From positions 1-33,469 of the forward strand of contig NW_021831964.1 of the NCBI RefSeq assembly GCF_006345805.1: a DNA stretch of 33,469 nt. Direction: 5' to 3'. A model generated the notes under the pieces. That model was not told where the DNA came from and ran no database searches. It saw nothing but the letters and a program-made list of their open reading frames with translations. A program made the translations under genes and the position numbers. This document shows, piece by piece, positions 546-29,639 of the stretch (positions are counted from its first letter, which is position 1; each line of letters opens with the position of its first letter). Source of the stretch: Octopus sinensis (Eukaryota).

Positions 546-608
546 AAGTAACATATCTCATACGTGTACAGATACGCTGAACACAAATACACTTGTAATG
601 TATATATG

Positions 609-1070
609 GGATCTTTTCGGTTTGACCGGTAGTTTTTTTTAAATAATTTCCACATAACTAAACACTTTTAAACTTCGTATACTGGTAGAATGTGTTTATA
701 AAACATCTTTTTCTCTTGGCTTTATTGAGAAAATTCTATGATTTGTAAGATATTTGTTGTTTTTTTTTCTTCAATTTCTGCAATTTCAACCAATCACTGA
801 CGTCTATTGAGGTAAAAAAAACATTCTGTGCCGTATGAATATGTCTCTCGTTTAAGAAACAGATAGGGTTTATTTACATTTGTGAAGAAAAAAAGATACC
901 TTTCCCCCTAACCCTAACCCTAACCCTAACCCTAACTAACCCTAACTCTAACCCTAACCCTAACCCTAAAACAGATTGAAATGCAATAGATCGATACTAG
1001 GGTCATAATTATGGGTGACAATTTCATATGACACCGCTAGAAAAAACTGCCGTTCAAACCGAAAAGATCC
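609..1070 (+). mobile_element. Non-autonomous DNA transposon (MITE), copy 1, with internal (CCCTAA)n tract
   Basis: TIRs GGATCTTTTCGGTTTGACCGGTAGTTTTTT (609) and AAAAAACTGCCGTTCAAACCGAAAAGATCC (ends 1070). Exact 8-bp TSD TATATATG at 601-608 and 1071-1078. Homologous inverted copy at 4168-4589. Confidence 0.93.
906..969 (-). repeat. Interstitial telomere-type (TTAGGG)n tract, about 10 units, inside the MITE
   Basis: CCCTAA units 906-969 with two variant units (CTAA, CTCTAA). Confidence 0.95.
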
Positions 1071-1259
1071 TATATATGTATATATAGATATAAACAAGAT
1101 ATATAAAACAAGATATATAAAACAAGATATATAAAAGAGATGCAGCACGAAAGTTTGTCAGTTAATGCAGGAGTCAGTCCTGATTTGGTTAGACTTGAAT
1201 CTCCAAAATACTAGCAAGGCACAATATGTGTACAAATGGTCCTAATACCATGAAACGTA

Positions 1260-1670
1260 ATTCTTAAATATTCTTAGGTATGGATTAGCTAATTATGAAC
1301 TAATCAACTTGTGTAAATAACTAATTCAATTAGACTTTAAGCTCCAGTTATGAATTACATTGAATATTACTCCTTAGACACAAGTAATACTTAAATGAAA
1401 ACTTAAGAAAAAAAATCGGGTATGGAAAGACAAATTAAGAAGTTTTAATTAGACATGTAATTAGGAATTAATTAGACTTTGTGCTTCAGTGTCAATTACT
1501 TCGCAGAAATGTTCACTAAACCCAACTGAATCTATTCATGTCACTTAACAACCATTTTAGGTATGGATTTCTAATTTAAGAAGCATTTTCTCCTAATCAC
1601 TATACACTAATTAAGAAGAAACATGCAGAAACACTGTTTTCAAGATAGTGCTTATTTCTCCTTAGAATAT
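1260..1670. repeat. Degenerate ~142-bp tandem repeat, 3 copies
   Basis: GGTATGGA at 1277, 1419 and 1560. AATTAGACTTT at 1328 and 1470. Confidence 0.6.
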
Positions 1671-1744
1671 AAACTTGTGTGGTGTGGCACTATCACATCA
1701 TTAGTGTATTTGTCCTTTGGGTCGAACTCGACCAAGATCGTTCT

Positions 1745-2085
1745 ATAAGTTCAAATCCCACCCCTGTCAGGGGGCGTAGTTCAATGAAGCCCCAAAACGG
1801 CTGGAAAAACAGTTCTTTTCTTTCCAAAGGAAAAATTATAGGATTCCGTTCCTTTTTTTTTTCTATTAAAATAAATTACTTCCTTTCGAAGAGGAACAAC
1901 AGTTCAAATCCCACCTTCGTCAGGGTGAGGGGCGCAGCTCAAATAAAGAGCCTAAAACGGCTGAATACAGGGGGGGGGATCCAAAAGAAAATTGTAGGTT
2001 TCCACCGTTCAAAAAATAAACTCCTTGCAATAGGAACAACAGTTCAAATCCCACCCCCTGTTTGGGGGCGGGGCGCAGTTCAGCA
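1745..2085 (+). repeat. Degenerate 140-158-bp tandem repeat with tRNA-like A/B-box motifs
   Basis: AGTTCAAATCCCACC at 1748, 1901 and 2041. GGGGCGYAGYTCA at 1771, 1929 and 2070. Shared AAAACGGCTG and AGGAACAAC blocks. Confidence 0.75.
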
Positions 2086-2581
2086 ATACCTACAAAAGCT
2101 AAATTTTAAAAATGCACTCCGTTGAAGAATCCAATCGAATAAACAATTGCCAAATGGCTACAGAATATTCACTATTCCCAAGAAGACTTGGAAATAAAAT
2201 TGTCCACCACAGCCTACAAACAGGCAACAGTTCACTATAATAATTTTCAATAATAAATTTTCAATAACAGTTTACGATAATTAACAGTTTCAACAATAAA
2301 AAATGACAACTCACAGATCGCCAGAAAAACACGATCGATTCTTCAACCGGAAGCAAGCTTCTTTATTTCATGGAAATTGGTCATAAAGAGGACAGCACAA
2401 GGTGGGGACAAAAAAAAAACGAATGGAATTAATGAAATTGTACGATGAAAGGTGAAATGAAGCCACTGGGCCCCACCCCCGAGCGACTTCATTGAACCTG
2501 TTAATACATCATTTTTAAAAAAATAGCTTATAACAATTATAATAATTAACGACAGCTATTTGTCCTTCATCAAAAGGATGT

Positions 2582-2971
2582 TTAAGTTAAGTTAAGTTAA
2601 TTTTTTGGCTCAAAAATCAAAGAGCAAGGCCATGTAGGGGGACATGGAGTTATGTACAGGGAGGGTGTTCATGCAAAGAGTTCAGGCCATTTCTGGTCAA
2701 GAGAGACTTTGAACCGAGCGGTCGTCGGCATCTTCACTATCTCGTCCGGCAGCTTGTTCCACGGATCCGCAACCCGGACGGAGAAAGCCCCTCTCCTTCG
2801 ATTGAGACGAAATCGTGGCAGATAGAGCTTTTCGGAGTGACCCCGCAGCCGACGCTCTGGAGCAGGAGTGAAGAACAGCTCTTTCGAGAGGTTACAGTTT
2901 CCGCTTATGATGTTGTGAGCAAGAATGAGATCACCACGGCGTCGTCGTTTTTCTAGAGAATAAAGGTCATG
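2582..2971 (-). mobile_element. 5'-truncated CR1-like LINE (ORF2 C-terminus, 3' UTR and (TTAAC)n tail)
   Basis: 2968->2669 reads open for 100 codons: DLYSLEKRRRRGDLILAHNII...RLRGHSEKLYL...AFSVRVADPWNKLPDEIV...FKVSLDQKWPELFA*. This is the typical CR1/L2-group ORF2 end. (TTAAC)3 tail at 2582-2600. Confidence 0.85.
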
Positions 2972-3142
2972 TTTGCGTTATACTTCTTTAGAATCTCGTG
3001 AACACTTACTTGTTTAGGCATTGAGCTGGTGTCCAGCTTCTGTTCCGGTTGGGCACCGATTAGCACAACCAGTCACAGTAAAATGGCGGGAACAGAATTA
3101 GAGATCTCTTCTTACTTTGTAGCGTCCTCTATTTCGGTGTCT

Positions 3143-3182
3143 GATGCTGAAGAAGAGACACTCACTCCGAAATGCATGCATC
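3143..3182 (+). ncRNA. Degenerate minimal hammerhead-ribozyme-like motif (probable Penelope-like relic)
   Basis: GATG-CTGAAGA-(aGAG..CTCc)-GAAA-TGCA-TG-CATC. Stem I is GATG/CATC and stem III is palindromic, but the cleavage site reads UG rather than UH. Confidence 0.45.
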
Positions 3183-3724
3183 TATAAGTCTTGTTAGAGA
3201 GCATTGCAAATTGACTTCGTTTGTCTACGGCGATAAATTTTCTCCATCACGAAATACAGTGAATAGCATTCTTAACGAGGTGGAATGTGCCCCAAGCGTA
3301 TTTGCACTGGTAACAAGTTTGTATATATCTAATCAGCTCAGAGTTGCCTTTCTTGGCATCTAGTACTGAATAGAACTAACGTAATCGATAGGTAACTATC
3401 TATTAATAGAGAGTGCTCTGAGCTGGCGGCCATGTTCTAAAATTATACAAACATATTTTTATTCAGACCATCATCAGAAGGATAATTCTTATAAAATGGC
3501 CGATAGACATAGGTTCGTGGCGATGGTTAATTAATAGCTTGTTTTAATTCATGTTACCTTGAGTTGGTAACAAGTCAAGCTTTACATGAACAGGCTCGGC
3601 CACAAGGATCGAATAGATTATTGATAGCCATAGGGTTTCATGCGGTTTCCTTTCATTGTGTTTAATTTTAGTTTTGTGTGTTTGATACGATTCTCTTCAA
3701 AATCCTTGGATGTATTGCGAGTAT

Positions 3725-4030
3725 GTTTGTTCCTTCTCGAGCCATACTTGGCTCATAAGGGCCGGTTTCCCGGTTTCCTTGGCGTATAGGTTCACCACCT
3801 GGACGGGACGCCGGTAGTTGCAGGTGAGTTGCAAGATGCAGGAGGAAAAAGTGAGAGAAAGTTTATTGGCGAAAGAGTCAGCAGAAGTTCGCCATTACCT
3901 TCTGCCGGAGCCGCGTAGAGCTTAGGAGTTTCGCTCATAAACACACCACACATCGCCCGGTCTGAGATTCGAACCTGCGATCCCTCGACCGCGTGTCCGC
4001 TGCTCTAACAACTAGGCCATGTGCCTCCAC
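3725..4030 (-). mobile_element. tRNA-derived SINE (type C head with GGAAACCGGCCCTTATGA tail)
   Basis: Minus strand begins GTGGAGGCACATGGCCTAGTTGTTAGAGC (A-box) ... GGTTCGAATC (B-box). Head matches the inner SINE at 24952-25338 and tail matches the outer SINE at 25349-25462. Confidence 0.85.
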
Positions 4031-4167
4031 TATTGCGGGTATGTTTCTCCTTGATGCCGAATCACTCGCAAAGTTCATGACTTGACATATGAGTTTTGCA
4101 GTGATGTACATTTGATGGTTGCTTGCACCTTGCAATGCTTCATCTTTTCTTGTATCTATAAATGCTC

Positions 4168-4589
4168 GGATCTTTTCGGTTTGAACGGCAGTTTTTTCTA
4201 GCGGTGTCATATGAAATTGCCACACATAATTATGACCCTAGTATCGATCAATTGCATTTCAATCTGTTTTAGGGTTAGGGTTAGTTAGGGGTGGGGGGAA
4301 GGGTATCTTTTTTCTTCAGAAATGTAAATAAACCCAATCTGTTTCTTAAACGAGGGACATATTCATACGGCACAGAATGTTTTGACCTCAATAGACGTCA
4401 TTGATTGGTTGAAATTGCAGAACTTGAAGAAAAACAACAACACATATCTTACAAACTATAACATTTTCTCAATAAAGCCAAGAGAAAAAAAGATGTTTTA
4501 TAAACACATTCTACCAGTATACGAAGTTTAAAAATGTTTAGTTATGTGGAAATTATTTTTAAAAACTGCCGGTCAAACCGAAAAGATCC
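4168..4589 (-). mobile_element. MITE copy 2, inverted relative to copy 1
   Basis: Same GGATCTTTTCGGTTTGA.CGG TIRs. Exact 8-bp TSD AAATGCTC at 4160-4167 and 4590-4597. The reverse complement aligns closely with 609-1070 but has only 2-3 TTAGGG units. Confidence 0.93.
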
Positions 4590-5039
4590 AAATGCTCTTT
4601 CCAAATGTGAAATTCAATGACTTTTGAAGCCTACAAGTTGTTTGGCGAGCTGATCACAAATGCTGTATGCATACATGCGTACATACTGCCTTATTCTATA
4701 CATACAATAAATACACACATAATACACATTCACACACACACATATACATATACAAGAACATAAATACATGCATACATACATATATGCTTGTAAATGCAAA
4801 TATATATAATTGCCTGCTAACAGAGATACTTACGTGCATCATGCATGCCTACATGCATGCATGACTGCAAATACGCATATATGCATACATACATAGATGC
4901 AGAACAGATATGCGGATAAGTGAACAAACGGTTACATAAAAGAAAACGGGGAAAAAAGAGAAAAAGAGAACAGGATAGAGAGGAAAAGAAAAGGAGTATG
5001 ACAATAAGCGAAGAAAAACAAAAAGAATGGCAATAAGAG

Positions 5040-6480: not shown

Positions 6481-6596
6481 GCAGGCTGACATGTGTAGTG
6501 GAACCCGTTGGAGTAGGAGGGTTAATAGAATGGGATTGGGAGTGGACAGGGTAAAGGGTGCTGGGGCGGGTGGCAGGGGCGGGGCTTCTTTCGCTA

Positions 6597-6975
6597 GTTT
6601 CAATCATTTGACTGCGACCATGCTGGAGCACAGCGTTTAAGTCGAACAAGTCGGCCCCACACGACTTATTCTTTGTGAAACTCGTATTTATCCTATCGGT
6701 TTTTCTTTGCCGAACCGCTAGGTTACGGGGACGTAAACACCACCAACATCAGTTCTCAAGCGATGTGTATGTGTGTGTGTGTTGGGGGGGGGGTACACAC
6801 ACACACATATATATATGACGGGCTTCTTTCAGTTTCCGTCTACCAAATCCACTCACAAGGCTTTGGTCTGCCGGAAGCTATAGTAGGAGACACTTGCTCA
6901 AGGTGCCACGCAGTGGAACTGAACCCTGAATCATGCGATTGGGAAGCACGCGTCTTACTACACAGCTACGCCTGC
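6597..6975 (-). mobile_element. Type A composite SINE (tRNA-like head, internal CA/TA microsatellite, conserved 3' module)
   Basis: Plus strand reads CATTTGACTGCG.CCATGCTGGAGCAC...GCCGAACCGCTA...[microsatellite]...GACGGGCTTCTTTCAGTTTCCGTCTACCAAATCCACTCACAAGG...CACAGC. About 10 homologous copies in the window. Confidence 0.9.
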
Positions 6976-6992
6976 ATATATATATGTACACA

Positions 6993-7023
<31 letters not shown>

Positions 7024-7044
7024 ATTCTTTTATTCTATTTTTCC

Positions 7045-7446
7045 CTTTTACATGTTTCAGTCATTTTGACTGTGGCCATGCTGGAGCACCGCCATTTAGT
7101 CGAGCAAATCGACCCTAGGACTTATTATTTGTAAGCACGGTACTTATTCAATCGCTCCCTTTTGCCGAACCGCTAAGTGACGGGAACGTAAACACACCAG
7201 CATCGGTTGTCAAGCGATGTTGGGGTGGGGACAAACACAGGCACACAAACATACGCAATATACATATATATATATATATATAGAAACATATACGACGAGC
7301 TTCTTTCAGTTTCCGTCTACCAGATCCACTCACAAGGCTTTGGTCGGGTCGAGGCTATAGCAGAAGACACTTGCTCAACGTGCCACGCAGTGGGACTGAA
7401 CCCGGAATTATGTGATTGGTAAGTAAGCTACTTACCCCACAGCCAT
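7045..7446 (-). mobile_element. Type A composite SINE
   Basis: Same three-part structure as 6597-6975. Confidence 0.9.
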
Positions 7447-7695
7447 TCGAGGAAGTCAAGTCCTCATTAGGGATTATGAAATCCAAGGTATTCCACAGGT
7501 TCAATCCGTATCGTATAATGGTAAAGTCTTTGGTACATATTTAGGATTATTGAAATTTTCGATATTGAGGGAAAACAAAGAGAAGAGAATGGAGAATAAA
7601 TGTATTCTGTTGTGTCTGGGGAGAGTCATTTTCTTTTTGTGCCTTATAATATAACACACTCACCGGTAAAATTTCCACTTTTTTCTTATTTTTAT

Positions 7696-7736: not shown

Positions 7737-8460
7737 TTATATGGCTTATACTTCCTTCTTTCTCTGAGCACATCCTACACTGTGGCGAGTCAGTGCTTTT
7801 ATCAATGTGATATTTGGAATAGTTCGTTCTGAGAGCTTATTCTTGAGCCCTGCACTCTAATGCCTCAGTGAGCCCTTTAAAGTCTACTTTCTGCAGCCAT
7901 TGCCAGGTTCTATTCCAATCAATCTCATCTTTATTCTTCAAGAAATAACTGTGCATTTTCTTGTCCTGCCAAATTTTCTTCGTCTGCTCTCTCTGGTCAT
8001 TCTTAAATTGTGTTGGATCTACAACTTCGTTCACTTCTAAGCTTCCCTGCATTTTCCCTGCTCCAATCATTTCTTCTTTACTCCCCTTGACATACCAAGC
8101 CAGGCTGTTCCCCTCTTCCCTTACGCAACCTTCAGAACACACCAATCCCCATCTTCCTTCTTTCCTCTTTACACACAATCTTGACACATCACTCTTGGGG
8201 TGTAGTTTCTTGTTCATTATCATTAATTTACATGTTCTCCGGTGTATTTCTTGTAATTCAACGTTTCTTCCAAGATACAAATTCCTGCCCCATATCTCAT
8301 CAAAACAACCACCCGCGTTTTAATTTCTCCGATCTTTTAGCGGCCATTTAGCTTCGATCGGAGCACAAGCCGAGTTTTCCTCAAATACTCTTTCATATAC
8401 ATTTCCTTCATCTTGTGTTCATTCATCTTATCTCTTTCAATGATACCCAGGTGCTGATGA
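7735..8460 (-). pseudogene. Decayed R4/Dong-clade (RLE-type) non-LTR retrotransposon ORF fragment
   Basis: HLGIIERD...EYLRKTRLVLRSKLNGR*KI...LMRYGAGI...ELQEIHRRTCKLM...LHPKSDVSRL...WQWLQK...AQE*ALRTNY...CRMC...SISHI. Post-RT region and start of the CCHC knuckle, with in-frame stops. Confidence 0.85.
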
Positions 8461-8823
8461 CAACTATTGAAGAAGAAACACGTATCAATGACTGCACTCT
8501 TATTTTCAGACAATAAGCTTCTCCTTTTATTTAACGGCGTGTCAGCCGTGAAGAACTCTTGAATTTTGAGATTATCACCCCCTTCTTAAATGGAACAGGT
8601 CTTAATCGGCGTTAATTTGAATAAGCCAAGCATTTACGTTGCATGGTATCTGACATACTCATATTTAAGTGGTATGACGAGTGTGTGTGCGGGTGTGGTT
8701 GGACTCATTTAAGTTTGTATATGTGTGTGTATGCGCGTGTATATGTTTGTGTATGTATGTGCACAAACTCTTACACTTTCCCTCTCTCTCTCTTCTCTCT
8801 CTCCTCTCTATATATATATATAT

Positions 8824-9320: not shown

Positions 9321-9660
9321 TCTTTTATTCTTTTACTTGTTTTAATCATTTTGACCCCCTGAACTTTCTATTTTTAAGCCTGGCACTTCTTCTATTTGTC
9401 TCTTTTACCGAACCGCTAAGTTACGGGGACGTAAACACACCAAGATCGGTTATCAAGCAATAGTAGGGGAACAAGCATATATATAAAGATACACACACAC
9501 ACACACGGTGAGCTTCTTCCAGTTTCCGTCTACCAAATCCACTCACAAAGTTTTGGTCGGCCTGAGGCTACTGTAGAAGACACTTGGCCAAGGTGCCACG
9601 CCGTAGGATTGAACCCGGAACCATGTGGTTGGGAAACAAACTTCTTACCAAACAGCCACA
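9321..9660 (-). mobile_element. Type A composite SINE (internally deleted 3' module)
   Basis: Homology to the other type A copies. Confidence 0.85.
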
Positions 9661-9666
9661 TATGCT

Positions 9667-9879
9667 CTCTTTTTTCTTTTTACTTCCTTCAGTCATTTGA
9701 TTGCGGCCATGCTGGAGCATCACCTTAGATGATTTTAGTCAAAGAAATCGACCCCATGACTTATTCTTTGTAAGCCTAGTTTTTATTCTGTCGGTCTCTT
9801 AGGCAGAACCGCTAAGTTACGGGTGACATAAGCATACCAACATTGACTGATAAGGGATGGCGGGTGGGGTGGGGAACAA

Positions 9880-9952
<73 letters not shown>

Positions 9953-10116
9953 CGACGGCCTTCCTCCAGTTTCCGTCTACGAAATCCACTCTCAAGGCTT
10001 TGGTCGGCCCGAGACTATTATAGAAGACACCTGCCCGAGGTACCACGCAGTGGGACTGAACTCGGAACCATGTGGCTGGGAAGCAAGTTTGTTACCACAC
10101 AGACACGTCTGCGCCT
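9667..10116 (-). mobile_element. Type A composite SINE
   Basis: Full three-part structure, directly adjacent to the previous copy. Confidence 0.9.
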
Positions 10117-10326
10117 ATATTTACAGACACGCCAATTGATATAGGTGGAGTGATGCGAACAGGAAAGAAAACAGAACTCAAAACATGAGTATACGTATGT
10201 ATATTTTTATTAATATTAAGCAGAAGCACGAAACTGTCGGACCTTGAGTCACTCTGACGCTTTTGCTAAATATCAATACACACACACACACAACACACAC
10301 ACACATATATATTTTTTTCTTTAATT

Positions 10327-10724
10327 TTCTTTTACTTGTTTCAGTCATTTGACTGCGGCCATGCTGGAGCACCGCCTTTAGTCGAGCAAATCGACCCCGG
10401 GACTTATTCTTTGTAAGCCAGCTACAGTACTTATTCTATTGTCTCTTTGGCCGAACCGCTAAGGTGACGGGGGACGTAAACACACCGCATCGGTTGTCAG
10501 CAATGCTAGGGGGACAAACACACACATGCACACATATATATACATATATATACATATATACGACGGGCTTCTTTCAGTTTACGTCTACCAAATCCACTCA
10601 CAAGGCATTGGTCGGCCCGGGGCTATAGCAGAAGACACTTGCCCAAGATGCCACGCAGTGGGACTGAACCCGGAACCATGTGGTTGGTTAGCAAGCTATT
10701 TACCACACAGCCACTCCTGCGCCT
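10327..10724 (-). mobile_element. Type A composite SINE (near-consensus)
   Basis: Full three-part structure. Head on minus reads AGGCGCAGGAGTGGCTGTGTGGTAA...GGTTCAGTCCC. Confidence 0.92.
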
Positions 10725-10732
10725 ATATATAT

Positions 10733-12954: not shown

Positions 12955-13182
12955 CTCTCTTTTTACTCTTTTACTTGTTTCAGTCATGTGACTGTGGCCA
13001 TGCTGGAGCACCGCCTTTAGTCGATCAAATCGACCCCAGGACTTATTCTTTGTAAGCCTAGTACTTATTTTATCGGTCTCTTTTTTGCCGAACCGCTAAG
13101 TTACAGGGACGTAAACACAACACCACCGGTTGTCAAGCGATGTTGGGGGGACAAACACAGACAAACACGCACACACACACAC

Positions 13183-13214
<32 letters not shown>

Positions 13215-13397
13215 TATATATATATATATATATACGACGGGCTTCTTTCAGTTTCCGTCCACCAAATCCACTCACAAGGCATTGGTCGGCCCGAGGCTAT
13301 AGTAGAAGACACTTACCCAAGGTGCCATGCAGTGGGACTGAACCCGGAACCATGTGGTTGGTAAGCAAGCTACTTACCACACAGCCACTCCTACGCG
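12955..13397 (-). mobile_element. Type A composite SINE
   Basis: Full structure with (CTTTTA)n-type tail and internal CA/TA tract. Confidence 0.92.
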
Positions 13398-21204: not shown

Positions 21205-21317
21205 GTATATATGTATATATACATCAACATCTCGGTGGTGGTTTCGGGATCTCGTCACAAATGATGCGAGGGTACATTCTGAGGCTGATACAGCGACAAG
21301 AATATCGGGGCCGCTGT

Positions 21318-21602
21318 GATGACGTTGATGCTGACGACGCTGATGCTGACGACGTTCATGCTGACGACGTTCATGCTGACGACATTGGTGCTGACGACAT
21401 TGGTGCTGACGACGTTGGTGCTGACGACATTAGTGCTGACGACATTGGTGCTGACGATACTGATGCTACCGACGTTGATGCTGACGACGTTGATGCTGAC
21501 GATGTTGATGCTGACGACGGTGGTGCTGACGACGTTGGTGCTGACGACGTTGATGCTGACGACGTTCATGCTGACGACGTTGGTGCTGACGACTTTCATG
21601 CT
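21318..21602 (+). repeat. 15-bp minisatellite, 19 units (GACGACGTTGATGCT consensus)
   Basis: Exact 15-bp phase. Translates as DD(V/I)(D/G/H)A pentapeptides. Confidence 0.95.
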
Positions 21603-22507
21603 GACGATAAATCATGAGTGGACAAGTACAGACGCCTTTTGTGCAACCCGGCTTCCCGCAGCTTATGTCTTTGACCAAACCGCAATTCTAGGTTAACGCT
21701 GAGACCAAAACTGGAGGAGACTGGATGCTTGGCATTTAGAACATTACCAGGCTCTCACAGCACTTCATTATTTGAACAACGCCTTCGCTTAGATAACATC
21801 TCTCGCATATTAAAGAGGATTATTGTAATTTATGAGCGACGATGCCTAGACAAGGGAACCACTTTGGATTTCGCATAAAGTAATCTGAGTAGTCTATTCT
21901 GGAGGATTTCATAGTCAAGGACTACTGATGGGGAGCATTACCTGTTCGAAATAAGTTTTATAGTCACGAAAATGCCAGCAGCCGAACCCATCCGAGATGC
22001 TTACAGCTCGACGAAAGCCTTCAGGCGAGGTATCCTGCCGCATCCATTCATTACTGATCTGCTGTCTTGTGTCGAACAACTGCTGTTGGCTGTAGAGCGA
22101 ATCTGTTTATCAGCCGAACCTGTAGTAATAATAATAATCGACGCGGTGCATTCCTTTAGCAGAGAAAACTGGTTACGTTTTTCTCTGTCTGTTGGCTGAA
22201 AGCATAAGGCACTGTTTGAAAAGTTTGAAAACAAGTATTTTTCCTGTTTGGCCAAACTCGTTAACTTCTTGAAGTACCACTTGAAGAGGGGATGGTGGCA
22301 GAGTGAGAGGAAGATGCTGCCTTCTAGTATGGGCGGGAGTGGGGGGGAGACTAGCGAGATTGAACGGGCGGTCGTACGCTGAACGAGTATTTCAAAGTAG
22401 AATGAAAGACACAGAGACGAAGTGCTTTTGAGGTTTTCAACCTTTCTACGGGATTTCCTTTCCTTTGAATTGCTCCAAGAAGTCAACCGCCACCAATGAA
22501 GAACTTT

Positions 22508-23774: not shown

Positions 23775-24219
23775 CTTTTACTTGATCCAGTCATTTGACT
23801 GCGGCCATACTGGATCACCGCCTTAAAGGGTTTTAGTCAAAGAAATCGACCCCAGGATTTATTATTTGTAAGCCTAGTACTCATTCTTTCTGTATCTTTT
23901 GCCGAGCTGCTACGTTACGGGGACATAAACACACCAGCATCGGTTGGTGGGGGACAAACATAGACACAGACACAGACACACGCACACACACATACATACA
24001 CATACATACATATATATATATAAATATATGTATATATATATATATGTATATATATATAATATATATATATATATATAATATATTATATATATATATAATA
24101 TATATATATATATATGTATGTATGTATGTGTATGTATGTATATATATTATATATATATATAATATATATATATATATAATATATATATATATATAATATA
24201 TAAATGTGTATATATATAT

Positions 24220-24304
<85 letters not shown>

Positions 24305-24482
24305 ATATATATATACATCAGGCTTCTTTCAATTTCCGTCTACCACATCCACTCACAAGGCTTTGGTCGCCCGAGGCTATATTACAAGATAACTACCGAA
24401 AGTGCCACGCAGTGAGACTGAACCCGGAACCATGTGGTTGGGAAGGAAGCTTCTTACTTACCACACAACCACATCTGTGCCT
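23775..24482 (-). mobile_element. Type A composite SINE with a ~330-bp expanded internal (TA)n tract
   Basis: 3' module 23775-23970, TA-rich tract ~23990-24318, head 24319-24482. Confidence 0.9.
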
Positions 24483-25462: not shown

Positions 25463-25921
25463 CACTATCATGTGATTGGTTTCTGAGGGTTGTCCTATCA
25501 TATCTCTTCTGTATTTACTGTTGCTAGAACCACTGCTGTGTAAACAGGAGACATCGAATGAAATCCCTCGAGTACCAGGACGGAGAAGGACCATGTCGGC
25601 ATTAGCGGATGATGTCACCGTCATAGTGTATTACATCAGGTACATAGACCGCCTCGTAAAGCGGTGACAAGAGGAAAATATCAGCCAAGAAAAGTCAGTA
25701 GTCCTGTAGCTCGGCACCTGGAAAAGTGGGTCCATACCGTTCAGTAACGTCGTAGGATCCTGGACAGACGGGATCGCTTTAATTGCTCAGGGTCTAGTTT
25801 GTCCAGAAATGAGACGAAATGACAGACTGGGTGGCCAATCTCATCCACAAATGGGCCGAAAGAAAGCTATCCCCCAAAAAGTCGGACAGGGGTAGCAAAT
25901 GAATACATCGTCTCTGTTTTA

Positions 25922-27202
25922 CGAAGGGCGTTCAATAAGTAATGCCCCTGACCAACTTCCCATAGCAGTAGAGCAACGAAACTTGGCACAGTTATTAGTC
26001 TTTTTCTACATAGGAACCACTCAGAGGTACGCATTTCTCCTATCGTTTGATGCAGCTCTGGAGACCATTTTTGTAGAAGATCCCAGCTTGTTCCTCCAAC
26101 CACGACGTGACTTCAGAAATCAAGGCTGCATCATCGGGGAAACGCGTTCCTTTCAAAAACAACTTCATGGCTGGGAAGAGGTGAAAATCAGAGGGTGCAA
26201 GGTCAGGAGAGTAGGGGAGATGGGGTGGAGTTCATAGCCGCACGCCTGTACTTCTGATCTGGCGACAAGCGAGTTGTGGACCGGAGCGTTGTCCTGCAAG
26301 AGGAGGATGCCTTTGCTGATCTTGCCCCGCCTCTTGATTTTGATAGCTTCTCTTAATTTCCTCAAAAGTGAAGCATAATAGGCTCCTGTAATTGTGGTAC
26401 CCTTTGCCAGGAAATCTGTCATCACTACTCCGTCCTGGTCCCAGAAGACTGTGAGCATGGCCTATCCAGCGGAGGGCTGCACCCTTGCCTTCTTTGGAGG
26501 AGTAGAGTCACGGTGCTTCCACTGCATTGACTGGGCTTTGGTCTCTGGATCATAGTGATGGATCCAGGTTTCATCCTGTGTAATCAGTCTTTTGAAAAAT
26601 TTTGACTCATCTTCTTGGCACATCTCCAAATTCATCCTCGAGCACTCGACGAGTTCTTGCTTCTGGAAAGGTGTGAGCAGCCTGGAAATCCATCTGGCAG
26701 ACACCTTTTGCATATGCAAATGGTCATGAATGATAGTTTCCACAGACCAGGTACTAATCTTGACCTCATGGGCTATTTGGCGAATAGTTATGCGTCGATC
26801 TTCCAAAATGGCAGCCTCAACTTGACGGACAGATGCCTCATCAATGGCAGAAGTGGGGCGACCAGATCTGGGAGCTGTTTCCACAGAGTTCCGACCATGT
26901 TTGAATTCACGATGCCAGCGTTTTACAAGGTCATATAATAGGGCATCATCACCATAAGTTACTTTCATTTCATCAAAAGTCTCTCATGGTGTGCGTCCTT
27001 TCAATTACAAAAACCGGATCACTGCTCGACACTCAACAGGCTCCATTTCACACTTGACTCAGTTCAAACACCTGTAAATCAGAAACCACAATTGGCTCAG
27101 AGCTGTAATTTTCCACTCAATCTATAGAGATATAAATAATTGCACATGCAAGATCAAACAACTGCAAGTAGGTTAGAGGTATTACTTATTGAACGTCCCT
27201 CG
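25922..27202 (-). mobile_element. Full-length mariner element (1,281 bp)
   Basis: 32-bp imperfect TIRs CGA(A/G)GG(G/A)CGTTCAATAAGTAAT(G/A)CC(C/T)CT(G/A)ACC with 5 mismatches. TA TSD at 25920-25921 and 27203-27204. Confidence 0.96.
25995..27046 (-). pseudogene. Mariner DD34D transposase pseudogene
   Basis: ATG at 27046. HTH region, SGRP, WISRLL (WVPHEL equivalent), QDETWIHHY, QDNAPVH and YSPDLAPSDFHLF motifs, with 34 residues between the 2nd and 3rd D. Four in-frame stops and one frameshift near 26225. Confidence 0.95.
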
Positions 27203-27660
27203 TATATTATCGCCTGACCACCGTACTTTGCCGCATTTCACATCTGACCAGACTGTGGCGCTTACTATTCCGCTTTTTGTCTGGCGTGCTATCTATTCAG
27301 CCAGCCTTAATGATAATAATCGTACTGATGAAGTACCAGGTACTGACTCTCATGGCTTTTGATCTTAACTGATTGGAAGTGTTAACATGTGCAAGTTTTG
27401 TCTGGGTGTAAAAAAATGGCTACAACAAATACTCTGCTCAATACCACAGATGTGCTTGTCAGTTGCTTGACCATAACCAGTATGAGCATGTCCCTTAGTG
27501 GCTGACAATATGTGCATCTCTGATCACAAACAGAAACAGTTGGGGAGCATCATGACCATGTGTTGAGAAGAATTCTTTGAAGTTTGATGAATGCACCCTT
27601 GAGAACATGGGTGCTTCGTTTATCGTCCTTAAACAACCATTATTATTATTATTATTATTA

Positions 27661-27721: not shown

Positions 27722-28696
27722 TGTTTGAGTTTTGCTTTATATTTGTACAAGTTGGCTTTATGTCTGTACAAGTTGGCTCCAAGTCTCACCCAGAGACCTC
27801 AAGAGACAACAGGTTAGAAGTTCTGTGCCATATATTTGGGGTTTTTTTTCCCCTTTTTTTTGGTGTTGTACTAGTGAATGTCTAATACATAAAAATAAAA
27901 TAAAAAAATAAATAAATAAATAAAAACAAGTTTGTTTTAAACCTTGGGATTACATTGAGAGTATTTTGCGTAGGATATGAGCAGTTCCCATGAGCACTAT
28001 CTTTTGAATTTCTGCCATTTTGGGGTTTCCTGGTATCTGAGTTAGGTAGCAATCAGTCCCTTTCGCTATCATTCCCAGGGCACCTATGACAACAGGTATT
28101 GTTTTAGTCTTCAGCTTCCACATTTTGCTGATTTCTATTTCAAGATCTTTATATTTGCTCAGTTTTTGGTAGGTCTTGACTGATACGTTTATATCGATTG
28201 GGACAGTCATATCAATGAGGAGGCATGTTCTTTGTCTGAAGTCTTTCAATATGATATCTGGCCTATTTGCATCTATCTTCCTGTCAGTTTGAATGGTGAA
28301 GTTCCAGAGGAGTGAGATGTGGTCATTTTCAAGCACAGGTGGTGGATTGTGTTCCCACCAGTTTTTTTCATGGGGCAAATCCAGGTTTTTGCAAATTACC
28401 CAGTGAATATATTGTGCTGCTCTATCATGCCTACTGAGGTACTCTGTAGGCGCTAGAAGACTGCATTTGGAGACAACATGGTCAATGGTTTCATTTTGTT
28501 GTCGGCATACACGACATGTTGGGCTACTGCCGTTCTTTAAAATGTTAGCCTGGTAGTTTCTTGTTGGTAGGCATTGATCTTGAGCTGCTATGATAAACCC
28601 CTCTGTTTCAGATTTTAAGCCAGAGGCCATTAGCCATTGATGGGTCAGGGCTTTGTCGATATCTGCATTATTCGCTCTCTTTGGGTATTTGCCATA
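27721..28696 (-). mobile_element. 5'-truncated R4/Dong-like non-LTR retrotransposon inserted in (TAA)n
   Basis: Uninterrupted frame 28696->27950: YGKYPKR...HQWL...AAQDQCLPTRNY...CRVC..HVVSKC (CCHC knuckle), RHD, PDII..D..KLSKY (RLE). 3' UTR runs into (ATT)n 27639-27720, and (ATT)n 28698-28719 lies on the 5' side. Confidence 0.92.
27950..28696 (-). pseudogene. C-terminal zinc knuckle plus restriction-like endonuclease domain of the R4/Dong ORF (truncated, no stops)
   Basis: ORF track 27950..28630, with in-frame extension to 28696. Confidence 0.9.
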
Positions 28697-28960
28697 GATT
28701 ATTATTATTATTATTATTATCAGGGAGCTTTTGAGCGGATTGAGTTGCTCGACCTGAAGAAAATCCTAACTTTGCTCCACCTGCAACGTCATGCGATGTT
28801 TATATTGACATGAGGTCAGCATGTTGCGCAAGTGCGGTTGTGATTTGCCTCACCCACCGCAGATACTCTATCTTTGTCTATGCTTTCATATAGTTTTGTT
28901 AAATTCCATCTGATTCAAGTCTTCCCAGTATTTGTAACCGAATTCAAGTTCGTGGACTCT

Positions 28961-29160: not shown

Positions 29161-29192
<32 letters not shown>

Positions 29193-29196
29193 ATAT

Positions 29197-29600
29197 AGGA
29201 GTGGCTGTGTGGTAAGTAGCTTGCTAACCAACCACATGGTTCCGGGTTCAGTCCCACTGCGTGGCATCTTGGACAAGTGTCTTATGCTATAGCCCCGGGC
29301 CGACCAATGCCTTGTGAGTGGATTTGGTTGACGGAAACTGAAAGAAGCCTGTCGTATATATGTATATATATATATAAGTGTGTTTATATGTTTGTGTGTC
29401 TGTGTTTGTCCTCCTAGCATTGCTTGACAACCGATGCTGGTGTGTTTACGTCCCCGTTACTTAGCGGTTCGGCAAAACAGACCGATAGAATAAGTACTGA
29501 GCTTACAAAGAATAAGTCCCGGGGTCGATTTGCTCGACTAAAGGCGGTGCTCCAGCATGGCCTCAGTCAAATGACTGAAACAAGTAAAAGAGTAAAAGAG
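29197..29600 (+). mobile_element. Type A composite SINE (plus strand) within (AAAT)n
   Basis: AGGAGTGGCTGTGTGGTAAG...GGTTCAGTCCC head, TA/GT tract, ...GACTGAAACAAGTAAAAGAGTAAAAGAG tail. (AAAT)n on both flanks. Confidence 0.93.
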
Positions 29601-29604
29601 AGAG

Positions 29605-29639
<35 letters not shown>

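What the first reader, a model, noticed from the sequence alone, without database searches (positions are those of the whole stretch)
609..4589. A MITE family that carries and apparently expands telomere-type TTAGGG arrays
Two copies of the same ~420-460-bp element each have their own perfect 8-bp TSD (TATATATG, AAATGCTC), so they inserted independently. Both hold a TTAGGG seed at the same internal position: 2-3 units in copy 2 and about 10 in copy 1. The element therefore distributes interstitial telomere-like, G4-capable tracts that change length after insertion. GG...CC termini with an 8-bp TSD suggest a Merlin-like rather than hAT mobiliser, which is inference.
Basis: partly seen in the sequence, partly recalled or inferred. 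Interest (0 to 1): 0.7.

Follow-up and report, generated by a model that had tools for sequence, protein, structure and literature searches.

The report
Octopus mini-transposon carrying telomere-type repeats
Two independent insertions of one small non-coding DNA transposon in an octopus genome both carry a short run of the telomere repeat TTAGGG at the same internal spot, at different lengths; this is a real but fairly ordinary case of a mobile element carrying an unstable simple repeat.

Summary
Copy 1 (609-1070, 462 bp) and copy 2 (4168-4589, 422 bp, inverted) share about 30-bp GG...CC terminal inverted repeats. Each has its own perfect 8-bp target-site duplication. Similarity stops exactly at the termini.

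Outside the repeat tract the copies differ at 20 of 390 sites. Both carry TTAGGG repeats 101 bp from the same end, with the same odd TTAG half-unit, so their common ancestor already had the tract. Copy 1 has 10 hexamers and copy 2 has 4, one of them degenerate. The 36-bp difference splits as 3 + 3 units around the TTAG.

The host is an Octopus of the vulgaris/sinensis group: the window's SINE copies are 90-95% identical to O. sinensis DNA. TTAGGG is the only experimentally determined cephalopod telomere motif.

An abundant SINE in the same window has an internal (TA)n(TG)n tract of 14-355 bp, so length change in transposon-borne repeats is routine in this genome.

GG termini with an 8-bp duplication fit the published Merlin signature, and Merlin is abundant in O. 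bimaculoides. No transposase partner could be examined.

No further copy was found in any reachable collection. Family-wide claims, the direction of change (expansion or contraction) and its timing therefore remain untested. I rate this a new member of a known kind, of modest interest.

The parts
601..608 (.). Left target-site duplication of copy 1 (TATATATG)
   Evidence: Identical 8-mer at 1071-1078, immediately outside both termini.
609..1070 (+). MITE-like element, copy 1 (462 bp, 33.5% GC, non-coding)
   Evidence: Aligns end to end with copy 2. Its longest ATG/GTG/TTG-initiated ORF is 31 aa; a 60-aa ORF at 966-1148 runs out through the right terminus into the flank. Six-frame peptides have no protein relatives.
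609..641 (+). Left terminal inverted repeat of copy 1 (starts GGATCTTTTCGGTTTGA)
   Evidence: Pairs with 1038-1070 at 30/33. Forms the only long stem in the DNA fold.
906..969 (-). Telomere-type tract of copy 1; G-strand (TTAGGG) is on the minus strand: (TTAGGG)3 TTAGAG TTAGGG TTAG (TTAGGG)5
   Evidence: TRF reports 11.0 units at 90% match, and also a 28-bp period with 2.0 copies at 96%. Pattern hits. Unit-by-unit reading.
1038..1070 (-). Right terminal inverted repeat of copy 1
1071..1078 (.). Right target-site duplication of copy 1 (TATATATG)
4160..4167 (.). Left target-site duplication of copy 2 (AAATGCTC)
   Evidence: Identical 8-mer at 4590-4597.
4168..4589 (-). MITE-like element, copy 2 (422 bp, inverted relative to copy 1)
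   Evidence: Aligns end to end with copy 1. 94.9% identity outside the tract (20/390 mismatches).
4168..4196 (+). Terminal inverted repeat of copy 2, the end nearest the tract
   Evidence: Pairs with 4561-4589 at 28/29; stem in the fold.
4269..4298 (+). Telomere-type tract of copy 2, G-strand on plus: (TTAGGG)2 TTAG TTAGGG GTGGGG GG
   Evidence: TRF reports 2.7 perfect units at 4269-4284. The remainder was read. Canonical G4 motif at 4272-4298.
4561..4589 (-). Terminal inverted repeat of copy 2, far end
4590..4597 (.). Right target-site duplication of copy 2 (AAATGCTC)

Best explanation
These are two independent cut-and-paste insertions of one roughly 400-bp non-autonomous DNA transposon (MITE-like) in the genome of an Octopus of the vulgaris/sinensis group. 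The element has about 30-bp GG...CC terminal inverted repeats and makes 8-bp target-site duplications. That is the published signature of the Merlin superfamily, so a Merlin-type transposase supplied in trans is the most likely mobiliser (inferred).

The last common ancestor of the two copies already carried a short interstitial telomeric tract: at least four TTAGGG units with a diagnostic TTAG half-unit, 101 bp from one end. Transposition therefore copied a telomere-type seed to new loci (shown for these two loci).

The tract then behaved like any transposon-borne microsatellite in this very repeat-rich genome. Replication slippage or unequal exchange changed the unit number on both sides of the TTAG interruption, giving 10 hexamers in one copy and 4 in the other (mechanism inferred). 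Direction and timing are undetermined.

The tract most probably began as one-step telomerase- or telomere-templated filler at a double-strand break in a progenitor element, possibly at the internal-deletion junction that created the MITE. Chance birth of exactly the host's telomeric hexamer seems less likely. This last step is speculative.
For: - Element anatomy, duplications and exact homology boundaries.
- Non-coding.
- Same tract position and shared TTAG interruption in both copies.
- No other (TTAGGG)2 in the window or in the 118 kb of L108-L112.
- Host is Octopus: the window's ~400-bp SINE copies match O. sinensis locus L109 at 90-95% and O. bimaculoides L108 at about 86%. The best named protein hit of a window RT ORF is O. 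bimaculoides at 77%.
- TTAGGG is the only experimentally determined cephalopod telomere motif (PMC13218726).
- Merlin diagnostics are 5'-GG termini, 8-9-bp TSD and TIRs of 24-462 bp (PMC8101967). O. bimaculoides has 191 Merlin sequences, singled out there as among the most abundant bilaterians.
- Length change of transposon-borne repeats is routine here: the SINE's internal (TA)n(TG)n tract spans 14-355 bp among 7 copies in this window.
- MITEs with hitchhiking microsatellites are an established class (Coates 2011, cited in PMC6947457; DTC84, PMC3879986).
- Short interstitial telomeric sequences are documented as one-step insertions at double-strand breaks (PMC8537989).
Against: - Only two copies are known. 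None was found in 56 kb of O. bimaculoides plus 20 kb of O. sinensis DNA, so high copy number, a usual MITE criterion, is unshown.
- No transposase-bearing partner with this TIR could be examined, so the Merlin assignment rests on terminal features alone. MULE elements and some rarer superfamilies can also give 8-bp duplications.
- Copy 1's tract also reads as a 28-bp unit repeated twice at 96%. One larger duplication, rather than unit-wise slippage, may explain part of the difference.
- Nothing here bears directly on a telomerase origin.
- In vertebrates, transposons were judged not to be involved in spreading one class of interstitial telomeric sequences (TERC-ITSs; PMC8537989).
Confidence: 0.75

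Rival explanations
1. The length difference arose before insertion. Two source (master) copies already had different unit numbers, each daughter simply inherited its state, and nothing changed at these two loci afterwards.
For: The copies differ by about 5% outside the tract. They may therefore descend from different source copies, and two paralogous insertions cannot time the change.
Against: This is not really against the core model, since slippage still happened somewhere in the lineage. The SINE-borne tracts in this window show wide variation between individual copies (14-355 bp), which suggests in-place instability is common.
Confidence: 0.4
2. The mobiliser is not Merlin but another superfamily that gives duplications of about 8 bp (hAT, P, MULE/Mutator, Zisupton, Novosib).
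For: An 8-bp TSD is also typical of hAT and P, and possible for MULEs (own knowledge). No transposase was linked to this TIR.
Against: The termini GGATC...GATCC do not fit the hAT YARNG start or the P-element CA... start. Neither duplication fits the hAT target consensus nTnnnnAn or nnnTAnnn (own knowledge of these consensuses; sequences). The TIRs are about 30 bp, not the long TIRs typical of MULEs. All described Merlin families start with GG and give 8-9-bp duplications, and Merlin is abundant in Octopus.
Confidence: 0.3
3. The tract is an ordinary microsatellite born by chance inside the element, from a G-rich or TTAGGG-like proto-repeat. It has no link to telomerase or telomeres, and its identity with the telomere motif is coincidence.
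For: The genome is extremely rich in simple repeats. The tract abuts a G-run (GGGGGAAAGG / GGGGTGGGGGG). Birth of microsatellites inside transposons is well documented.
Against: True hexanucleotide arrays are rare in this window; almost all arrays have 2-4-bp units or are variants of them. Landing by chance on the one hexamer that is the host telomere repeat is a priori unlikely. Short interstitial telomeric sequences are known to be inserted in one step at breaks.
Confidence: 0.3
4. The telomere-type cargo is functional or selected, for example recruiting telomere-binding proteins, forming regulatory G-quadruplexes, or acting as fragile or recombination sites. The family spreads such sites through the genome.
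For: Both copies contain a canonical G4 motif, 2 of the 6 in the window. A CCAAT box plus a CRE-like TGACGTC is conserved in both copies.
Against: There is no evidence of constraint. The tract is degenerating in copy 2 (GTGGGG unit) and has a TTAGAG variant in copy 1. The copies have diverged about 5% overall. The region is a transposon- and repeat-rich stretch with no recognisable host gene.
Confidence: 0.05
5. The two copies are products of a segmental duplication, an inverted-repeat assembly artefact, or one composite element, not independent transposition events.
For: They lie only 3.1 kb apart in inverted orientation (pair I12).
Against: Each copy has its own perfect 8-bp duplication, and the two duplications differ. 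Similarity ends exactly at the termini. The outer flanks (TATATATG and AAATGCTC) do not match, so this is not a composite transposon. The copies differ by about 5% and by several indels.
Confidence: 0.02

Closest known systems
MITEs with hitchhiking microsatellites: (GTCY)n MITEs of Lepidoptera (Coates et al. 2011, cited in PMC6947457) and the DTC84/pearl tandem-repeat MITEs of bivalves (PMC3879986)
   Same: A small non-coding element with inverted termini and target-site duplications carries an internal simple repeat at a fixed position. The unit number differs between copies, so transposition spreads repeat seeds.
   Different: Here the cargo motif is the host's telomeric hexamer TTAGGG. The termini and 8-bp duplication point to Merlin, whereas DTC84/pearl elements have an AA duplication. 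Only two copies have been seen.
Merlin superfamily of DNA transposons (Feschotte 2004; PMC8101967)
   Same: 5'-GG termini, TIRs within the 24-462-bp range and an 8-bp TSD. The host genus is reported as unusually rich in Merlin transposases.
   Different: There is no transposase here, and no autonomous partner with this TIR could be examined. Membership is by terminal signature only.
Short interstitial telomeric sequences inserted at double-strand breaks (Nergadze/Giulotto model; PMC8537989)
   Same: A short, nearly exact run of the host telomere repeat at an internal, non-fusion site. A plausible one-step origin at a break in a progenitor copy.
   Different: Those loci are single insertion events, and transposons were judged not to spread them. 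Here the tract sits inside a mobile element and has been copied to at least two loci by transposition. No telomerase-RNA-like flank could be tested.
The octopus tRNA-derived SINE with an internal (TA)n(TG)n tract, seen in this same window
   Same: A transposon-borne simple repeat at a fixed internal position with large differences between copies (14-355 bp). It is the in-genome comparator for how the MITE tract behaves.
   Different: It is a class I retroposon, its repeats are dinucleotide, and it is present in many copies.
Telomere-associated retroelements ending in telomeric repeats (Penelope-like/Athena elements; subtelomeric non-LTR elements, e.g. PMC4522978)
   Same: Mobile elements that physically carry the host's telomeric repeat units.
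   Different: Those are reverse-transcriptase elements with terminal telomeric repeats used for priming at chromosome ends. This is a DNA transposon with an internal tract at interstitial loci.

Membership tests
MITE (miniature inverted-repeat transposable element) | Terminal inverted repeats | tested here: met
   29-33 bp at 91-97% in both copies.
MITE (miniature inverted-repeat transposable element) | Target-site duplication of fixed length flanking each copy | tested here: met
   A perfect 8-bp duplication at each copy, and the two duplications differ.
MITE (miniature inverted-repeat transposable element) | Small size and no coding capacity | tested here: met
   422-462 bp. Longest stop-to-stop frame 67 aa. 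No protein relatives for six-frame peptides among 5.8 billion proteins.
MITE (miniature inverted-repeat transposable element) | High copy number in the genome | not testable with these tools
   Two copies in the window. None in 77 kb of octopus loci, and none in the metagenome, viral or prokaryote collections. No whole octopus genome can be searched here.
Merlin superfamily | 8- or 9-bp target-site duplication | tested here: met
   Exactly 8 bp at both copies. Criterion from PMC8101967.
Merlin superfamily | TIRs begin with 5'-GG and are 24-462 bp long | tested here: met
   The TIRs begin GGATCTTTTCGG... and run about 30 bp. Criterion.
Merlin superfamily | Autonomous partner encoding a DDE_Tnp_IS1595 transposase with the same termini | not testable with these tools
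   No such element is in the window (ORFs). Octopus genomes cannot be scanned here. The literature only shows that Merlin is abundant in O. bimaculoides.
hAT superfamily | 8-bp target-site duplication | tested here: met
hAT superfamily | Short TIRs starting YARNG, and target consensus nTnnnnAn (Ac-type) or nnnTAnnn (Buster-type) | tested here: not met
   The termini are GGATC. The duplications TATATATG and AAATGCTC fit neither consensus on either strand. The consensuses come from my own knowledge of the family, and only two sites were available.
Mutator/MULE | 9-11-bp target-site duplication and long (often over 100 bp) TIRs | tested here: not met
   8-bp duplication and about 30-bp TIRs. Criteria from my own knowledge; atypical MULEs are not excluded.
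Short interstitial telomeric sequence (break-repair type) | A few nearly exact units of the host telomere repeat at an internal site | tested here: met
   Host and motif.
Short interstitial telomeric sequence (break-repair type) | One-step insertion relative to an empty orthologous or ancestral sequence | not testable with these tools
   This needs a family member or autonomous element lacking the tract. None is available.
Microsatellite-hitchhiking MITEs | Internal simple repeat at a fixed position with a unit number that varies among copies | tested here: met
   Same position and shared TTAG interruption; 10 versus 4 hexamers. Only two copies.

The most novel reading that the evidence does not exclude
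The element is the visible tip of a sizeable octopus MITE family that was created when telomerase healed a break or deletion junction inside a Merlin transposon. Since then it has seeded hundreds to thousands of expandable interstitial TTAGGG tracts across the genome. That would be a transposon-driven route for spreading interstitial telomeric sequences, with possible consequences for G4 formation, telomere-protein binding, fragile sites and the extensive chromosome rearrangement of coleoid cephalopods.
Probability: 0.15. Interest if true: 0.6.

Novelty: new member of a known kind. Interest (0 to 1): 0.3.

Why it matters
Interstitial telomeric sequences are usually explained as relics of chromosome fusion or as one-off telomerase insertions at breaks. 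In vertebrates, transposons were judged not to spread one such class, the TERC-ITSs (PMC8537989).

A DNA transposon that carries a telomere-type seed and copies it to new loci would be a third route. It would be easy to quantify in the chromosome-scale octopus assemblies now available. It would also give a natural series of paralogous TTAGGG tracts for measuring hexamer slippage.

With only two copies in hand, and with transposon-borne repeats changing length routinely in this genome, what is shown so far is an ordinary hitchhiking microsatellite whose motif happens to be telomeric.

Tried and rejected
Searches for more copies, all negative:
- The 17-mer TIR in viral contigs gave 7 single hits in phage contigs with no second TIR.
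- The 21-mer TIR in metagenome contigs gave 0 hits.
- The 17-mer TIR in metagenome contigs gave 100 single hits. An nhmmer model of the element matched none of the loci fetched up to then, 107 records.
- The 21-mer TIR in bacterial and archaeal genomes gave 0 hits.
- A 599-aa concatenate of all six-frame peptides of both copies against 5.8 billion proteins gave 0 hits.

The only route to octopus DNA was exact-protein look-up:
- It gave 36 kb plus 20 kb of O. bimaculoides and 20 kb of O. sinensis, with no copy in any of them. No (TTAGGG)2 was found either.
- Four ENA contigs fetched through mariner relatives turned out not to be octopus. They share only the mariner.
- Looking up the window's own 226-aa ORF found nothing on record.

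Other negative results:
- Rfam and tRNA scans of the window found nothing.
- Nine full-text literature searches found no description of a MITE with internal TTAGGG repeats. Repbase and Dfam could not be consulted.

Ideas rejected:
- Penaeid shrimp as host, my first guess from the repeat density. It was rejected by the SINE match to O. sinensis.
- Segmental duplication or a composite transposon. It was rejected by the distinct duplications and the exact homology boundaries.

I prepared but did not run a Pfam scan of the six-frame ORF segments of 50 aa or more that passed a complexity filter. It was judged not decisive.


Full report
**1. What is in the sequence**

The region was read directly and the two elements were aligned.

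- Copy 1 occupies 609-1070 (462 bp). It is flanked by TATATATG at 601-608 and again at 1071-1078.
- Copy 2 occupies 4168-4589 (422 bp) in the opposite orientation. It is flanked by AAATGCTC at 4160-4167 and 4590-4597.
- Neither duplication can be extended to 9 bp.

The terminal 17-mer GGATCTTTTCGGTTTGA occurs exactly four times in the 33.5-kb window, at the four element ends. No further site appears even with three mismatches allowed (0.08 expected by chance).

blastn and an nhmmer profile of the two copies show that the inverted repeats run 29-33 bp at 91-97% identity. They also show that similarity between the copies stops exactly at the termini, and that the window holds no other full or partial copy. 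Single-strand folds show only the roughly 30-bp terminal stem.

The elements are AT-rich (33-34% GC against 39% for the window). Their longest stop-to-stop frame is 67 aa. The distinct duplications, unrelated flanks and opposite orientation make independent insertion the only reasonable reading. Segmental duplication, assembly artefact and a composite transposon are excluded, because the outer flanks differ.

**2. The tract**

Tandem Repeats Finder reports 11.0 units of CCCTAA at 906-969 and 2.7 units of TTAGGG at 4269-4284. (TTAGGG)2 with at most one mismatch occurs only in these two places in the window (9 overlapping hits against 0.13 expected).

Read unit by unit on the C-rich strand:

- Copy 1 is CC (CCCTAA)5 CTAA CCCTAA CTCTAA (CCCTAA)3, followed by AACAG.
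- Copy 2 is CC CCCCAC CCCTAA CTAA (CCCTAA)2, followed by AACAG.

Both tracts end 101 bp from the same terminus, and both contain the same irregular 4-base CTAA (TTAG) unit. The tract, including that irregularity, was therefore present in the common ancestor of the two copies. It was not acquired separately.

The 36-bp length difference resolves into three extra hexamers on each side of the shared CTAA. Copy 1 can also be read as a 28-bp unit repeated twice at 96%, so one larger duplication may have contributed.

Outside the tract the copies differ at 20 of 390 aligned sites (p = 0.051, K2P 0.053) and by five small indels. The 101-bp arm (3 mismatches) is more conserved than the 297-bp arm (17 mismatches).

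**3. The host, and whether TTAGGG is its telomere motif**

The very high repeat density first suggested a penaeid shrimp, whose telomere repeat is TTAGG. That would have changed the meaning of the finding, so I tested it.

- A reverse-transcriptase-associated ORF (27950-28630, minus strand) has its best named relative in Octopus bimaculoides (77% identity, next best 64%).
- A mariner ORF was not diagnostic. Its best named hit is a mantis shrimp at 86%.
- Two octopus proteins from that search gave access to genomic DNA.
- The window's abundant ~400-bp SINE-like repeat matches the O. sinensis locus L109 at 90-95% identity in many copies. It matches O. bimaculoides L108 at about 86%.

The window is therefore from an Octopus close to O. 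sinensis/O. vulgaris. [quoted passage not shown] 2014, as cited in PMC13218726). 'Telomere-type' is thus correct for this host.

**4. The hunt for more copies**

I could not reach it.

- TIR scans of viral contigs gave only single chance matches.
- TIR scans of metagenome contigs gave nothing or single chance matches.
- The nhmmer profile confirmed that none of the 107 records fetched up to that point holds more than the 17-mer.
- The TIR scan of prokaryote genomes gave nothing.
- A concatenate of all six-frame peptides of both copies found no relative among 5.8 billion proteins.
- The 77 kb of genuine octopus DNA that could be fetched contains no copy and no (TTAGGG)2.
- Four further contigs obtained through mariner relatives are not octopus.

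Copy number, the family consensus and the distribution of tract lengths therefore remain unknown.

**5. How it most likely works**

*Shown.* A non-coding element with inverted termini transposed at least twice, making 8-bp duplications. It carried the tract with it each time.

*Inferred, mobiliser.* Merlin elements are defined by TIRs of 24-462 bp that begin with 5'-GG, by 8- or 9-bp duplications, and by a DDE_Tnp_IS1595 transposase (PMC8101967 citing Feschotte 2004).

- All three terminal criteria are met here.
- The same paper singles out O. bimaculoides for abundant Merlin sequences (191).
- hAT is disfavoured. The termini do not start YARNG, and neither duplication fits the hAT target consensus (my own knowledge of that family, two sites only).
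- The decisive feature, a transposase gene between these termini, could not be tested.

*Inferred, length change.* The same window offers a direct comparator. The octopus SINE has an internal (TA)n(TG)n tract at a fixed position. Its length ranges from 14 to 355 bp among seven copies in the window, and from 42 to 92 bp in the copies measured cleanly in the other octopus loci; one 218-bp measurement in L109 ran through part of a second SINE copy.

Length instability of transposon-borne repeats is thus routine in this genome, and slippage or unequal exchange is the economical explanation for the MITE tract.

- Direction is open. Copy 2 has only two consecutive perfect units and a decayed GTGGGG unit, while copy 1 has a TTAGAG variant. 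Expansion in copy 1 and contraction plus decay in copy 2 are both compatible.
- Timing is also open. The two copies may descend from source copies that already differed.

*Speculative, origin.* True hexanucleotide arrays are rare in the window, so chance birth of exactly the host telomere hexamer seems unlikely. Short interstitial telomeric sequences are known to be inserted in one step during double-strand-break repair (PMC8537989).

MITEs arise by internal deletion of autonomous elements. A telomerase-made filler at that deletion junction would explain a tract lying between a 297-bp arm and a 101-bp arm. Only comparison with the autonomous parent can test this.

**6. Claims about G-quadruplexes and function**

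A regex for the canonical G3+N1-7 motif finds one in each copy (918-942 on the minus strand; 4272-4298 on the plus strand). That is 2 of the 6 in the whole window. G4 capability is therefore a property of the element whether or not the tract is expanded. Nothing in the data indicates selection: the copies have drifted about 5%, and both tracts carry degenerate units.

**7. Comparison with what is known**

The closest class is MITEs with hitchhiking microsatellites: the (GTCY)n MITEs of Lepidoptera (cited in PMC6947457) and the tandem-repeat MITEs of bivalves (PMC3879986).

What is unusual here is the motif. In vertebrates, transposons were judged not to be involved in spreading TERC-ITSs, one class of interstitial telomeric sequence. 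Nine full-text searches found no description of a MITE with an internal telomeric tract. Repbase and Dfam could not be consulted, and uncurated octopus repeat libraries very probably already contain this family.

Telomere-associated retroelements that end in telomeric repeats (for example PMC4522978) are a different mechanism.

**8. Verdict**

- Inheritance of a telomere-type tract by transposition, and a length difference between copies, are shown for two loci.
- The Merlin inference is consistent with published criteria.
- 'Family', 'expands' and 'after insertion' are untested.

I rate this a new member of a known kind, a microsatellite-carrying MITE that is probably Merlin-type, with modest interest (0.3). 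It would be more interesting only if a genome-wide survey showed a large family seeding many interstitial TTAGGG tracts.

Noticed in passing
window 6587-7448, 9356-10731, 12955-13396, about 23800-24450, 29182-29609 (and L109 at several sites): An abundant ~400-bp tRNA-derived octopus SINE carries an internal (TA)n(TG)n microsatellite at a fixed position. Its length ranges from 14 to 355 bp among 7 copies in this window. Much of the window's extreme repeat content sits inside or beside these SINE copies.
   Followed up: partly
window 25920-27207 (minus strand; ORFs 26462-26968 and 26165-26458): A frameshifted Mos1/SETMAR-type mariner is 89-91% identical at the DNA level to copies in four ENA contigs that lack any octopus SINE (L111-L114). 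It is 86% identical in protein to a mantis shrimp (Oratosquilla oratoria) sequence, but only 52-65% identical to octopus-annotated relatives. This pattern suggests recent horizontal transfer between distant marine animals.
   Followed up: partly
window 790-804 (copy 1) and about 4390-4415 (copy 2): Both MITE copies conserve a CCAAT box followed 3 bp later by a CRE-like TGACGTC (CAACCAATCA[C/A]TGACGTCTATTGAGG), a promoter-like module. No test of function was possible.
   Followed up: no
window 1700-2100: Three tandem ~135-bp units each contain a tRNA-3'-like GTTCAAATCCCACC box followed by a G-rich segment. ARAGORN and Rfam call nothing here. This looks like a tandemly repeated SINE-head or tRNA-derived fragment.
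   Followed up: no
window 3795-4025 (minus strand), directly left of copy 2: A second tRNA-derived SINE-like sequence (GGCCTAGTTGTTAGAGCAGCGGACACGCGGTCGAGGGATCGCAGGTTCGAATCTCAGACC...) ends about 140 bp from the copy 2 insertion site.
   Followed up: no
window 2672-2977 (-), 7840-8585 (-), 27953-28765 (-): Fragments of non-LTR retrotransposon reverse-transcriptase genes. The last has a weak zf-RVT match (below Pfam's curated cut-off), and its best named relative is in O. bimaculoides (77%). The wider family (52-64%) is spread across cnidarians, echinoderms and unnamed marine assemblies.
   Followed up: partly
window 21317-21607: A 15-bp minisatellite (TGACGACGTTGATGC, 19.4 copies, 88% match) reads in frame as a D/V/A-rich repeat on one strand. 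No protein-family match was sought for it.
   Followed up: no
window 601-608 / 1071-1092: Copy 1 inserted into a TA-rich microsatellite-like stretch (TATATATG within ...GTATATATG | TATATATGTATATATAGATAT...). Both duplications fit nAnnnnTn on either strand. With only two sites this may be chance, but it could hint at an AT-rich or palindromic target preference.
   Followed up: no
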